Origin: Diadema antillarum
Taxonomy: Eukaryota
Reading direction: 5' to 3'
Assembly (NCBI RefSeq): GCF_040938485.1
Contig: NW_027271670.1
Coordinates: 124,001-188,000 of the forward strand
DNA: 64,000 nt
Shown here: piece after piece, positions 42,901 to 52,638 of the stretch
Numbering within the stretch: the first letter of the stretch is position 1
How the letters are laid out: each line of letters starts with the position of its first letter
Notes under the pieces: generated by a model
Databases searched by the model: none
What the model saw: the letters and a program-made list of their open reading frames with translations, nothing else
What the model was told of the DNA's origin: nothing
Translations under genes and position numbers: made by a program

Positions 42901-44172
42901 GAGGCTAGTCTCTTGTGGATCATTTGGGGGCTGCTGGGGCTGCTGCGGAACCTGTGGCTGGACTGCTGTCTGTACCCCATCATCGGGCAGAGGGCCGGGC
43001 ACAAACTCTCCAGTCTCCCCATCTATGCTGTACTCCCACGGATTGATGTTCTTTTTGAGGTCATCGTTGAAGCCTGGCTTGATGTCACCTTTGTATGGGT
43101 AAGTGTCTGGACACACTCCCATGTCTATGTCCTGTCTCCATAAGCTTTCTATCAGGTCCATGTCCTGGAAAGACACACAAGATAATATGTAAAGTTAGTC
43201 CAACAGGTCTAATAAAGGATTGTCTTTCTTTAAAATAAAATAAAAAAAAAACTCAAACATTAATGGTAGATTCACAAGGAAAAGTATAACTTCTCATCAT
43301 TTTAGCTTTGATTTTTTTTTTTTGCATGACCATTATAGTGCCATGTGTATCTTGGAGTAAAACTTACTGTACATCGACTAGACTAGACTGTTCAACATCA
43401 AATGGCCACAAAATAATAGAAAATATTCATAGAACTTAAATTGTAATGACAACAAGCAGCACACAATGCATATAAATGTATTACCAACAAGGAAATCCCT
43501 TAGTTGGGCTACGTACTGCTTCTACCATTTCGTACTGAACACGTGTTCACAGATAAGTGATATGTTGTGTATGATCTATTATGATCGTCAAAAATGCCCG
43601 GGTACCTCTAAACTGAGCTCATCCGAGGAAGGCACTGGGGATACGGACAGGGGCGACTGTCCAACAGCCCCCTCCATTTCTGTATCCATCTCTTCAAAGC
43701 CTTCATCACTGTCACTATCGTGCATCGGCTGGTCAACATTTAGGTTTAATTGCGTTGGGTTCTGGGGATGGGGCTGGGCAACTGCATTGCCATTAGTCCT
43801 GTGCCCACTCCCCGAGTCTAGCGTCTCAAGTAAAAATGTTTGCAGCTCCACCCTTGATCTGTTTGTGATAGATGGAAGCCCATGTCCATGATAAAGCGAG
43901 TCCAGTTCCCTGAACACCGAGCGATTGTAGTAAAAAGAGTCTCGAATTATATTTTTGCTGTGCACTTGGCCTAAATCTACCCCTGCTGCATTGTACAAGT
44001 TGTGAAATTGAGTCTCAGTCAGGCCCACACTGGGCCCTAGGATGGAGTCTTGCAATCTAGGGTGGGTTACGAAGAGATGATCTCTCATGTAATCTGTCCA
44101 GTCGACACGGAGAACACTCATCATCAATGCTATCGCTAGCATTGCATCGTAGGGTAGCTTCTTGCGAATCAT
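39316..44172 (-). CDS. NFE2L1: CNC-bZIP transcription factor, Nrf1-like long isoform (761 aa). Exons 44172-43606, 43164-42207, 41090-40983, 39968-39316
   Basis: Exon phases 0,1,1 join to 2286 nt. The N-terminus MIRKKLPYDAMLAIALMMSVLRVD...LGPSVGLTETQFHNL resembles NFE2L1 MLSLKKYLTEGLLQFTILLSLIGVRVD...LGPSSAYTQTQFHNL. Downstream motifs: DMDLIESLWRQDIDMG (DLG region), DGETGE, LSLEDCLQLLE (Neh4), EQRWQDL (Neh5), basic region [20 protein letters not shown], zipper, and Neh3 VFLVPR. Confidence 0.95.
40983..41090 (-). CDS. NFE2L1/NFE2L2: Shared exon 3: (D)DSIFDESEGATGGYSSSSSEQDVFKGATGGYGVLR
   Basis: ccttgcag|AT...AGAG|gtgagc, 108 nt, phase 1-1; EGATGGY resembles NFE2L1 EGAVGY. Confidence 0.88.
41259..41445 (-). 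CDS. Candidate internal first exon 1c in intron 2, splicing in frame to exon 3
   Basis: ctaaaATGATG start (second in-frame aagATGG at 41364), 62 open codons + 1 nt, strong donor CATG|gtgagt, phase 1 matching the exon 3 acceptor at 41090. The peptide has no recognisable homology. Confidence 0.45.
42207..43164 (-). CDS. NFE2L1/NFE2L2: Shared exon 2: Neh2 (DMG, ETGE), Neh4/5 and Asn/Ser/Thr-rich domain
   Basis: ttccag|GAC ATG GAC...AGT G|gtgagt, 958 nt open. Confidence 0.95.
43606..44172 (-). CDS. NFE2L1: First coding exon 1a: NFE2L1-type N-terminal ER-anchor domain
   Basis: First in-frame ATG is at 44172 (the ORF-track start at 44229 is TTG); hydrophobic AMLAIALMMSVL segment; donor GAG|gtaccc, phase 0. 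Confidence 0.92.
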
Positions 44173-45350
44173 GATGAGTTCTGAATCTGGAGAGGTTTTC
44201 ACCTCCCCGACTTCAATCTTTTGAAGCAAGATACAATTCTTTAAAACTTCTCAAATGGTCAGTCACAGACCAGACATAACTCCACTATGTTTGCTTTGTT
44301 TGCGCCGGCGATAAACAAAGGCTGAGCAACTGCGCAGACGAATCCAGTACAGCTCTTGATGCAGTATTGTACGAAAACTAGCCGCAGCGAGAGTCAGGCT
44401 AGGCCGGCTTTGTATGCACAATGCACCACGTTGTCGCCGAAGAGCAGTACATACCCGTGCGTGCACACTGACTCACACCACACTAGGGCCGCAGGGGAGT
44501 GCTAGGCACCACTAATTCGTTATCTTTTTGGACATTTGCCGTGCATATAATTATCTTTTTCACTTATACGCACGATATAAGTCTGCCTACATTGATTCCA
44601 TTTCAGATGAGCCCTAAAATCACGGACTTTAGCCAATAACCACCAGAGAACGGGTGCTTCTTCGGGCGTTTTCCCCACTGAATGAACTATCCGTTGTCCG
44701 TAGCAGCACCCGCAACTTTGTCTTAGCAGCAGATACCCGGCAATGTTATTGTCTCCTTCCACAGGAAAACTGGCCAGTCATCGCGAAGAGCGATCCACAA
44801 CCTTCACAATTCTCCACTGTTTAATTCAAAAGTACGGCGTATTTTGTGATTTAAATAACAGGAATAGTTTGCTGCTTGAAGTAATTTCCTCTTTAGAATC
44901 TTGGTTTAGCTTGCGAATGTGTCTACGACTCAAATAGATGCAAAAACCAGAATGAAAACCGCTCAGGGCACCGCACACTACCACCGTTCAATTAGAATTC
45001 ACCCCGGAAGACAAATTGCATGCGCGCGCGTGCGGGTCAAACTCGATATCTAAAATTAGTAATGTGCGTAATGATCCACGGTGGCGCACTGGCATTCTAG
45101 AACGTTCAATACTAGCAGCTGACTCCCGTTTGACTGGCAGTGCTGTCTCAAAATTCGTTTCAATCGATTTCAAAGACGTTTTGAGCGTTATCTACGCAAC
45201 ATGATAGCCTACCTTTCTGTGGTATGAGGAAAACAACATTATGTTTTGGTCTAAAAAAAATATTCAAAGATGGGGATTCGCATACAGGACAGGTGTGAGC
45301 GCTTGCGCAATCGAATCGGCGATACGCTGGAGTGGTAGAAAGCATTAAAT
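44173..45350 (-). promoter_or_regulatory. Probable 5' UTR/promoter of the Nrf1-type exon 1a
   Basis: CpG-enriched unique sequence upstream of the ATG; AP-1 site TGACTCA at 44469-44475. Boundaries approximate. Confidence 0.4.
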
Positions 45351-51657: not shown

Positions 51658-52569
51658 TTTTTTTTATACAAGTCCGTGTCTTGTGCACCTGTTATACATG
51701 GAAGCAACGTCTAGTCATATGACATTCGTATCCTCTGTCAACACGACCATTCAAAAGAGACATTGATCTATATTGTCATCGCAACTACACAACTCCTGTT
51801 GCAGTCTATATGACCAGCCATTTTTACGAAGAAATAGAATATGGGAATTAATACAGATGCATAATAAATAAGATGCCACCTAATCCGTACGTACCAGAAA
51901 AGTCAATATCCATAAGGTGTACAAAGTTGGTATACATGTACAGTGTATATTGTGCATCTTTATTATTTTACTGCATGGAAGAGGACGCGCAGTGTACGTC
52001 CATATAATCATTATGACAGATAGTTTGAGACACAATAACATTAGTAATATGGCGAAAGGATATGACTACTTCGAGATAGAGAACAAATGCGGTACTGTTC
52101 CGCTCATGTTGTATGACACATACACACCATGTGGATTTCTGCGTCAGCTTTGGACTCGCTGCTTAAAAAGACACAGCCTTGTCATGGCAGTCATCTTCTC
52201 ATTAGTGACTGAAAGTACAACAGACTGTCTTGGTGAAAACGTAACAGATATACCAAATACAGTGTATATCCATTCAGAGGTTACTTACAGTATGTCAGGT
52301 TGAACTCTGGAACGTATTACAAGGGTAAATGTACCAAACGTAAAAACATGGAGCCACTATCAATAACACGAAGGAAAAGGTATCACGCGTCAATATGCGA
52401 TATTGTGGAAAAAAATAAGGTAGACAAGCTATACCCAGGCTTCGAACATTCAGTCAGCACAGGACAGGTTTTCCACATTTACCAGTGTTTACATGTGCTT
52501 CTAATATTGCATGGCATGGAGTGGTATATCACGTATACTATTTGCGGCATGATGAAATGAACAACATAC

Positions 52570-52638
52570 CTGCTGTGACGGTGGTAGTGTTTTCTGAGGG
52601 ACGACAGAAATACCCATCTCTTCAAAGTCGTAATCCAT
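52570..52638 (-). CDS. NFE2L2: Alternative first coding exon 1b: NFE2L2-type, MDYDFEEMGISVVPQKTLPPSQQ
   Basis: Strong Kozak caaaATGG; 69 nt ending CAGCAG|gtatgt, phase 0, matching the phase-0 acceptor at 43164. Joined sequence LPPSQQ|DMDLIESLWRQDID parallels human NRF2 LPSQQ|DMDLIDILWRQDID. About 230 nt upstream contains no ATG. Confidence 0.85.

What the first reader, a model, noticed from the sequence alone, without database searches (positions are those of the whole stretch)
43164..52638. One Nrf locus carries both an Nrf2-type and an Nrf1-type first exon
Seen: a 69-nt minus-strand exon at 52638-52570 (caaaATGG...LPPSQQ|gtatgt), absent from the ORF track, is phase 0 and fits the acceptor at 43164, giving LPPSQQ|DMDLIESLWRQDIDMG. 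A second phase-0 first exon at 44172-43606 encodes an NFE2L1-like membrane-anchor domain. Predicted products are 595 aa and 761 aa. Known: human NRF2 reads MMDLELPPPGLPSQQ|DMDLIDILWRQDIDLG with an intron at this point (605 aa), while NFE2L1 has the ER-anchor N-terminus (772 aa). C. elegans skn-1 and Drosophila cnc use alternative N-termini, but I do not know of the vertebrate-like LPSQQ exon being described in an invertebrate. Inference: this is the pre-duplication state, with oxidative-stress (Keap1) and proteasome-recovery (ER) functions in one gene under separate promoters, later partitioned between NFE2L2 and NFE2L1.
Basis: partly seen in the sequence, partly recalled or inferred. Interest (0 to 1): 0.85.

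Follow-up and report, generated by a model that had tools for sequence, protein, structure and literature searches.

The report
Sea-urchin Nrf gene, two first exons
This sea urchin's single Nrf stress-response gene really does start from either of two alternative first exons, one giving a membrane-anchored protein and one a soluble protein, but public databases already annotate both forms and worms and mammals have the same design.

Summary
On the minus strand, a 69-nt first exon (52638-52570) or a 567-nt first exon (44172-43606) joins the acceptor at 43164. Exons 41090-40983 and 39968-39316 follow.

The two spliced products (595 and 761 aa) are identical to RefSeq isoforms X2 and X1 of "endoplasmic reticulum membrane sensor NFE2L1-like" of Diadema antillarum.

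The exon order (short exon, anchor exon, common exon) recurs in D. setosum, Lytechinus variegatus and Apostichopus japonicus. In A. japonicus an RNA-seq contig splices the short exon straight to the common exon and skips the anchor exon. RefSeq lists similar isoform pairs in sea stars and a crinoid.

PSQQ is Diadema-specific among echinoderms. A Met-acidic-hydrophobic start and the phase-0 junction before DMDLI are shared with shark and teleost Nrf2.

The "clean partition" idea is too simple. Mammalian NFE2L1 keeps alternative first exons that give soluble isoforms (Nrf1b, NFE2L1-616), and C. elegans skn-1a/c is an established precedent.

Verdict: real, already annotated, a known kind. The evolutionary angle is modest: the reviews I read describe echinoderm Nrf as an NHB1-bearing, Nrf1-like protein, and my term searches of them found no short isoform.

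The parts
52570..52638 (-). Alternative first coding exon 1b (23 aa, MDYDFEEMGISVVPQKTLPPSQQ; phase 0; donor gtatgt). It starts isoform X2 (595 aa).
   Evidence: product identical to XP_071497539.1; same exon in D. setosum, L. variegatus and A. japonicus; 98.6% identity to D. setosum
52639..53379 (-). Putative 5'UTR and promoter of exon 1b (inferred).
   Evidence: 92-98% identity to D. setosum against an 85% background, falling to 81% just inside the intron. CpG o/e is 0.91-1.25. The A. japonicus transcript has a 375-nt 5'UTR contiguous with its exon 1b.
43606..44172 (-). Alternative first coding exon 1a (189 aa; NHB1-type hydrophobic anchor; phase 0; donor gtaccc). It starts isoform X1 (761 aa).
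   Evidence: product identical to XP_071497538.1; 15-residue Kyte-Doolittle mean 1.77 at aa 9-23; ILGPSVGLTETQFHN motif; 66% DNA identity to Lytechinus exon 1a
44173..45179 (-). Putative 5'UTR and promoter of exon 1a (inferred).
   Evidence: CpG o/e is 0.99-1.12 at 44501-45500. Identity to D. setosum is 92-94% over 45179-44580.
42207..43164 (-). Common exon 2. It carries Neh2-like DIDMG...ETGE, the Neh5-like QRWQDLATIPELQ, and an Asn-X-Ser/Thr-rich stretch.
   Evidence: 33 residues and 4 Lys between DMG and ETGE; 12 sequons at aa 331-462 of the long form
40983..41090 (-). Exon 3 (108 nt, phase 1 to 1; DDSIFDESEGATGGY...GATGGYGVLR).
   Evidence: needed for the exact RefSeq match
39316..39968 (-). 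Exon 4: CNC-bZIP DNA-binding domain, the VFLVPR tail and the stop codon.
   Evidence: (Pfam bZIP_Maf, E = 8e-17)

Best explanation
This is the single cap'n'collar bZIP (Nrf/NFE2L) gene of the sea urchin Diadema antillarum, on the minus strand.

Transcripts appear to start at one of two places. The distal start gives a 23-aa first exon (1b). The proximal start, 8.4 kb downstream, gives a 189-aa first exon (1a). Each first exon splices in phase 0 to the same acceptor, just before DMDLIESLWRQDIDMG.

The long isoform (761 aa) has an NHB1-type hydrophobic anchor. By analogy with NFE2L1 and SKN-1A, it should enter the ER membrane, be N-glycosylated on the sequon-rich part of exon 2, and be released when the proteasome is impaired.

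The short isoform (595 aa) has no hydrophobic segment. It should be a soluble protein controlled through the shared DMG/ETGE Keap1-type motifs, like NFE2L2, SKN-1C or mammalian Nrf1b.

Shown here: the exon structure, the exact identity to RefSeq X1 and X2, the conservation of this layout across echinoderms, and exon 1b-to-exon 2 splicing in a sea cucumber transcript.

Inferred: separate promoters in Diadema, subcellular localisation, Keap1 control and proteasome-recovery function.
For: - Sequence, splice sites and reading phases.
- Both spliced products are identical to XP_071497539.1 and XP_071497538.1.
- The same exon order, 1b then 1a then 2, occurs in D. setosum, L. variegatus and A. japonicus, each with a GT donor and A at -3 and G at +4 around the ATG.
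- An A. japonicus RNA-seq contig maps to its genome as 5'UTR plus exon 1b, then exon 2, exon 3 and exon 4, skipping the NHB1 exon.
- RefSeq lists isoform pairs or triplets in sea stars and a crinoid.
- Only the long form has a hydrophobic segment (15-residue Kyte-Doolittle mean 1.77 against a maximum of 0.69). There are 12 N-X-S/T sequons in exon 2, and ETGE and VFLVP are present.
- Pfam bZIP_Maf matches.
- Two blocks that are CpG-richer and more conserved between the Diadema species lie upstream of the two first exons.
- Literature precedents: skn-1a/c (PMC12251208) and Nrf1a/Nrf1b (PMC3483171).
Against: - I saw no Diadema RNA evidence. Support for the X2 model in this species is a RefSeq prediction plus conservation.
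- The first Keap1 motif is DMG rather than DLG. The spacing between the two motifs is 33 residues with 4 Lys, shorter than in vertebrate Nrf2, so two-site Keap1 binding is uncertain (PMC6155405).
- Both isoforms carry the Neh2-like region, so Keap1 control need not be specific to the short form.
- ARE-like motifs are not enriched near either start.
- The hemichordate Glandiceps locus shows no NHB1 exon within 10 kb, so the dual layout is not universal in Ambulacraria.
Confidence: 0.85

Rival explanations
1. Exon 1b is the direct ancestor of NFE2L2 exon 1. After the vertebrate genome duplications, the two first exons and their functions were cleanly divided between NFE2L2 (soluble, Keap1-controlled) and NFE2L1 (ER-anchored, proteasome recovery).
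For: - The short peptide ends at the same place, directly before D-M-D-L-I, in echinoderm short isoforms and in vertebrate Nrf2, and is of similar size. In the four echinoderm loci an intron was mapped at that point.
- A Met-[D/E]-hydrophobic start occurs in all 11 aligned N-termini, including shark and teleost Nrf2.
- PSQQ occurs in Diadema and a teleost, and PTQK in Patiria.
- Human exon 1 contributes 16 aa (PMC11926719).
Against: - Mammalian NFE2L1 keeps alternative promoters and first exons that give soluble isoforms (Nrf1b, 12 aa; NFE2L1-616, 44 aa), so there was no clean partition.
- PSQQ is absent from Lytechinus, sea stars, the sea cucumber and the crinoid.
- The peptides are too short for a statistical test of homology.
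- No amphioxus, tunicate or cyclostome locus was examined.
- The vertebrate intron position could not be checked with tools, because no DNA was returned for the shark locus.
Confidence: 0.3
2. Exon 1b is an echinoderm-lineage alternative first exon. It is equivalent in function to soluble CNC isoforms elsewhere but not orthologous to NFE2L2 exon 1, and the Diadema PSQQ match is coincidence or convergence.
For: - The exon's C-terminal residues vary widely among echinoderm classes.
- Soluble isoforms made from alternative first exons arose or persist in nematodes and mammals with unrelated N-terminal peptides.
- Sea stars, the crinoid and the sea cucumber have yet another first exon type, so first exons turn over.
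Against: - The Met-[D/E]-hydrophobic start and the phase-0 junction are shared from crinoid to shark.
- Exon 1b lies upstream of the NHB1 exon in the three echinoderm lineages mapped.
Confidence: 0.3
3. Exon 1b in Diadema is a gene-prediction artefact or a rare, untranslated transcript start with no protein product.
For: I saw no Diadema transcript data. X2 is a computed RefSeq model.
Against: - Only 1 synonymous change in 69 nt against D. setosum, where about 10 differences would be expected.
- The peptide is conserved with Lytechinus (MDVDFDEMG..VPQ.QKTLP).
- The Kozak context and GT donor are conserved.
- The homologous splice is proven in an A. japonicus RNA contig.
Confidence: 0.05

Closest known systems
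Mammalian NFE2L1 isoforms Nrf1a/TCF11 versus Nrf1b and NFE2L1-616 (PMC3483171, PMC10646089)
   Same: - One gene makes two kinds of product. One is an ER-targeted long form with an N-terminal anchor.
- The others are soluble or nuclear forms made from alternative promoters and first exons, each adding a short unique peptide (12 or 44 aa).
- From the published lengths and my recollection that mouse Nrf1a is 741 aa, Nrf1b replaces about 170 N-terminal residues. That places the junction at the homologous DIDLIDILW exon (inference).
   Different: - In mammals the Nrf1b exon lies between Nrf1a exons 1 and 2. In echinoderms exon 1b lies 5-8 kb upstream of the anchor exon.
- The peptide sequences were not compared here.
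C. elegans skn-1a / skn-1c (PMC12251208, PMC4987142)
   Same: A single CNC gene uses different transcription starts and splicing to make a transmembrane, ER-routed, N-glycosylated isoform (Nrf1-like) and a soluble isoform (Nrf2-like). Both share one DNA-binding domain.
   Different: - SKN-1 lacks the leucine zipper and the Keap1-type DLG/ETGE motifs, and is controlled by WDR-23.
- The echinoderm gene keeps the bZIP domain, ETGE and a DLG-like DMG in the shared exon.
Vertebrate NFE2L2 (Nrf2) exon 1 and its P2 promoter (PMC11926719)
   Same: - A short first coding exon (16 aa in human) sits in front of the exon that begins D-M-D-L-I-D-I-L-W.
- It has a Met-acidic start, and SQQ-type ends occur in Diadema, shark and teleosts.
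- A second start yields a form beginning at the internal Met, as in echinoderm X4 models that begin MDLIE.
   Different: - NFE2L2 has no NHB1 exon.
- Vertebrate DLG-to-ETGE spacing is longer.
- Orthology of the first exons is plausible but unproven.
Drosophila cnc isoforms (CncA/B/C) and amphioxus BjNRF (PMC6155405, PMC11989980)
   Same: A single invertebrate locus whose longest product combines NHB1-type and Neh2-type regions.
   Different: - The reviews I read describe a combined protein. My term searches of them found no soluble isoform made by swapping the first exon.
- As far as I recall, CncC has no described form that keeps Neh2 but lacks NHB1.

Membership tests
CNC-bZIP (Nrf/NFE2L) transcription factors | CNC plus basic-leucine-zipper DNA-binding domain | tested here: met
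   Pfam bZIP_Maf E = 8e-17 and bZIP_1 above its cutoff in both isoforms. RefSeq names them NFE2L1-like.
CNC-bZIP (Nrf/NFE2L) transcription factors | Neh2-type DLG and ETGE motifs and a Neh3-type VFLVP tail | tested here: met
   LWRQDIDMG (DMG in place of DLG), DGETGEF and VFLVPR are all present.
NFE2L1/SKN-1A-type ER-anchored isoform | N-terminal hydrophobic anchor (NHB1) present only in the long isoform | tested here: met
   15-residue Kyte-Doolittle mean is 1.77 at aa 9-23 of X1, against a maximum of 0.69 in X2. The ILGxS..LTETQFHN block is conserved in all four echinoderm loci. Sea urchin NHB1 is noted in PMC6155405.
NFE2L1/SKN-1A-type ER-anchored isoform | Cluster of N-glycosylation sequons for NGLY1-dependent editing | tested here: met
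   12 N-X-S/T sequons lie between aa 331 and 462 of X1. Actual glycosylation was not tested.
NFE2L1/SKN-1A-type ER-anchored isoform | ER localisation, DDI2 cleavage and induction by proteasome inhibition | not testable with these tools
   This needs cell biology. A TFLLE motif sits at the expected NHB2 position, but that rests on a resemblance I recall from memory.
NFE2L2-type soluble Keap1-regulated isoform | No membrane anchor, and a short first coding exon joined in phase 0 before DMDLI | tested here: met
NFE2L2-type soluble Keap1-regulated isoform | Two-site (DLG plus ETGE) Keap1 binding with vertebrate-like spacing and Lys content | tested here: inconclusive
   DMG replaces DLG. There are 33 residues and 4 Lys between the motifs. 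The literature notes short spacing in sea urchins.
NFE2L2-type soluble Keap1-regulated isoform | Keap1-dependent degradation and activation by electrophiles | not testable with these tools
Alternative-promoter CNC genes (skn-1a/c, Nrf1a/b) | Mutually exclusive first exons spliced to one common acceptor | tested here: met
   Both spliced products match RefSeq X1 and X2 exactly. Splicing is proven in A. japonicus RNA. For Diadema itself this is inferred from the models and from conservation.
Alternative-promoter CNC genes (skn-1a/c, Nrf1a/b) | Separate functional promoters | tested here: inconclusive
   Two CpG-richer blocks that are also more conserved lie upstream of exons 1b and 1a. No TSS data were available.

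The most novel reading that the evidence does not exclude
Exon 1b is the true orthologue of the first coding exon of vertebrate NFE2L2, and possibly also of the Nrf1b exon. If so, a soluble isoform carrying Keap1-type motifs already existed alongside the ER-anchored isoform in the last common deuterostome ancestor. NFE2L2 would then have arisen simply by losing the NHB1 exon, while NFE2L1 kept both starts. The reviews I read describe echinoderm and amphioxus NRF as an NHB1-bearing, Nrf1-like protein, and my term searches of them found no short isoform. This reading would revise that picture and give a tractable sea-urchin model for isoform-specific tests.
Probability: 0.45. Interest if true: 0.5.

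Novelty: already known. Interest (0 to 1): 0.3.

Why it matters
The finding checks out as a gene model, but it repeats what RefSeq already holds for this genome. It also repeats a design principle documented in C. elegans and in mammalian NFE2L1: one CNC gene making both an anchored and a soluble isoform through alternative first exons.

The remaining value is evolutionary. The dual-start layout was mapped in sea urchins and a sea cucumber, and RefSeq annotates matching isoform pairs in sea stars and a crinoid. The short exon resembles the vertebrate Nrf2 first exon. The reviews I read describe invertebrate deuterostome NRF as an NHB1-bearing, Nrf1-like protein, and my term searches found no short isoform in them. 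Sea-urchin embryos would allow isoform-specific knock-downs to ask when Nrf2-type and Nrf1-type regulation separated.

Tried and rejected
- A three-exon model without exon 3 gave 559 and 725 aa. I rejected it after finding the 108-nt exon at 41090-40983 and the exact RefSeq match.
- A search for SQQ|GT in the A. japonicus locus found nothing. The homologous exon there ends PKT|gt and was located through the RefSeq X3 N-terminus.
- blastn between Diadema and Lytechinus did not pick up exon 1b or either promoter; only exons 1a to 4 and two non-coding blocks aligned. Exon 1b conservation with Lytechinus therefore rests on the peptide and on its mapped position.
- ARE-like TGAnnnnGC motifs: none upstream of exon 1b and one upstream of exon 1a, which is no enrichment.
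- An ESM Atlas search with the exon 1a peptide gave only weak, unrelated hits. NHB1 similarity to vertebrate NFE2L1 therefore rests on the literature and RefSeq naming, not on an alignment made here.
- No DNA was returned for the brittle-star-like contig or the shark nrf2a locus, and no record exists for the teleost X2 protein. The vertebrate intron position was not verified with tools.
- The third first-exon type of sea stars and the crinoid (ELRR.P motif) was not found in any sea-urchin, sea-cucumber or hemichordate locus.
- Earlier notes from this scan held nothing on this locus.
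Full report
**What is in the sequence**

On the minus strand, 52638-52570 reads caaaATGG...CCGTCACAGCAG|gtatgt and translates to MDYDFEEMGISVVPQKTLPPSQQ. An in-frame TAA lies 21 nt upstream of the ATG. This is the only SQQ|GTR site on either strand of the 64-kb window.

The acceptor tttccag|GACATGGAC at 43164 opens an exon that begins DMDLIESLWRQDIDMG. 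A second first exon, 44172-43606, encodes 189 aa starting MIRKKLPYDAMLAIALMMSVLRVDW and ends SLE|gtaccc, also in phase 0.

Exon 2 ends at 42207 in phase 1. My first model joined exon 2 directly to the bZIP exon at 39968 and gave 559 and 725 aa. A 108-nt phase-1 exon at 41090-40983 (DDSIFDESEGATGGY...) then turned up in the intron.

**Identity**

Homology searches led to echinoderm proteins. A cluster look-up showed that the two spliced products are identical, residue for residue, to RefSeq XP_071497539.1 (isoform X2, 595 aa) and XP_071497538.1 (isoform X1, 761 aa). Both are named "endoplasmic reticulum membrane sensor NFE2L1-like" of Diadema antillarum.

The same look-up lists X1/X2 pairs for D. 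setosum, Lytechinus variegatus and L. pictus. It lists two to four isoforms for Patiria, Asterias, Apostichopus and the crinoid Anneissia, and a short isoform X2 for Acanthaster was found separately.

**Conservation of the layout**

I mapped the isoform N-termini onto fetched loci. The order is exon 1b, then exon 1a, then exon 2 in each case:
- D. setosum: positions 10001, 18596 and about 19635.
- L. variegatus: positions 10001, 15223 and about 16564.
- A. japonicus: positions 2708, 9486 and about 10448.

Each exon 1b has a GT donor directly after it, with A at -3 and G at +4 around the ATG.

Between the two Diadema species, exon 1b differs by one synonymous base in 69. Background identity is 85%, and exon 1b ranks in the top 3% of 69-nt windows.

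The 800 nt that contain exon 1b and the stretch upstream of it are 92-98% identical, and identity falls to 81% just inside the intron. A second conserved block (92-94%) lies upstream of exon 1a. The same two places have the highest CpG observed/expected ratios in the region. This fits two promoters but does not prove them.

**Transcript evidence**

A 2795-nt RNA-seq contig from the Logan collection encodes the 612-aa short isoform as one open frame. It maps to the A. japonicus genome in four blocks:
- 5'UTR plus exon 1b (2331-2765)
- exon 2 (10447-11427)
- exon 3 (11866-11992)
- exon 4 (16537-17789)

The contig skips the NHB1 exon at 9486-10027. The exon 1b-to-exon 2 splice is therefore real in a sea cucumber. 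For Diadema it remains a RefSeq model backed by conservation.

**What the isoforms probably do**

Only the long form has a hydrophobic segment. Its 15-residue Kyte-Doolittle mean is 1.77 at aa 9-23, against a maximum of 0.69 in the short form. The ILGxS..LTETQFHN block is conserved in all four echinoderm loci.

The shared exon 2 holds:
- DIDMG and ETGE, separated by 33 residues that include 4 Lys;
- a QRWQDL..PELQ motif;
- 12 N-X-S/T sequons.

The last exon gives the Pfam bZIP_Maf match.

By analogy with NFE2L1/SKN-1A and with NFE2L2/SKN-1C (PMC12251208), the long form should be ER-routed, glycosylated and responsive to proteasome stress. The short form should be soluble and under Keap1-type control. 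None of this was tested. Because both forms carry the Neh2-like motifs, Keap1 control may not be specific to the short form.

**Is exon 1b "Nrf2-type"?**

I aligned short-isoform N-termini from sea urchins, a sea cucumber, sea stars and a crinoid with shark and teleost Nrf2. All 11 begin Met-[D/E]-[V/Y/I/M], and all end directly before [D/N]-[M/I/R]-[D/E]-[L/V]-I.

PSQQ itself occurs only in Diadema and one teleost; the other teleost has VSQQ. Lytechinus has LDPQE, Patiria PTQK, Asterias NEK and Apostichopus PKT.

Human NFE2L2 exon 1 contributes 16 aa of the open reading frame, and an alternative P2 promoter skips it (PMC11926719). I could not verify the vertebrate intron position with tools. 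Orthology is plausible, at roughly even odds, but the peptides are too short to prove it.

**Why the "partition" reading is too simple**

[quoted passage not shown] It replaces the ER-targeting N-terminus with 12 residues and yields the soluble activator Nrf1b (PMC3483171). A further intronic promoter yields NFE2L1-616, which has a 44-aa N-terminus (PMC10646089).

So NFE2L1 itself retains the dual-start design. The echinoderm X1/X2 pair corresponds to Nrf1a/Nrf1b at least as well as to Nrf1/Nrf2. A better summary is asymmetric loss: NFE2L2 lost the anchor exon, and NFE2L1 kept both starts.

The general idea that invertebrate NRF combines Nrf1 and Nrf2 features is in the reviews (PMC6155405; PMC11989980). 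My term searches of those papers found no short isoform.

A hemichordate locus (Glandiceps) has a two-codon first exon and no NHB1 exon within 10 kb. The layout is therefore not universal in Ambulacraria.

**Verdict**

The remaining interest is the possible orthology of the short exon with the vertebrate Nrf2 first exon, and the chance to test isoform functions in sea urchins.

Noticed in passing
window 41640-41728 (minus strand, intron 2 of the Nrf gene): An 89-nt non-coding block is 83% identical to Lytechinus variegatus (L002:18465-18552), which is higher than any coding exon of the gene (66-76%). It has stop codons in the incoming frame, no Rfam match, and a short hairpin with two compensatory changes, but the fold z-score is only -0.84. 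It could be a poison or alternative exon, or a splicing or regulatory element. It remains unexplained.
   Followed up: partly
window 38366-38441 and 38160-38239 (minus strand, downstream of the stop codon): A 3'UTR block is 75% identical to Lytechinus (L002:21112-21187). Next to it is a weak, sub-threshold Rfam mir-980 hit (27 bits against a gathering score of 47).
   Followed up: no
P0017, P0018, P0014 and P0031 (RefSeq X2 of Patiria, Asterias, Anneissia and Apostichopus): RefSeq X2 models in these species carry a third type of alternative first exon (36-81 aa). The sea-star and crinoid versions share ..ELRR.P..S.G.Y..K| before DMDLI; the Apostichopus peptide shows no such motif. The motif was not found in the Diadema window or in the D. 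setosum, Lytechinus, A. japonicus or Glandiceps loci. Mammalian NFE2L1 also has a third first exon (NFE2L1-616), but the sequences were not compared.
   Followed up: partly
L005 (Glandiceps talaboti, hemichordate), 10001-10006 and 10572 onward: The annotated Nrf gene starts with a two-codon exon, ATGATG|gtaatc, spliced to DTDLIDVLWKQDIDMG. No NHB1-type exon was detected in the 23.5-kb locus. A TRIM-like gene occupies the upstream flank up to position 7081.
   Followed up: partly
L002, L003 (Lytechinus variegatus): The same 762-aa gene lies on two assembly records (CM031026 and CM031017). On L003, a partial NFE2L1-like model flagged LOW QUALITY (385 aa) starts about 9 kb downstream. This could be a tandem duplicate or an assembly duplication. 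No second bZIP copy is present in the Diadema window.
   Followed up: no
L007 (GCA_014845345.1 contig JACSEG010001902.1, 4207 nt): A contig in a genome-type assembly carries an intronless 614-aa open frame for an Asterias-like short isoform. It is either a transcript-derived contig or a processed copy.
   Followed up: no
window 17078-17581: A GC-richer stretch has overlapping open frames on both strands (111-167 aa) and no Pfam match. It may be an exon of an unidentified neighbouring gene.
   Followed up: partly
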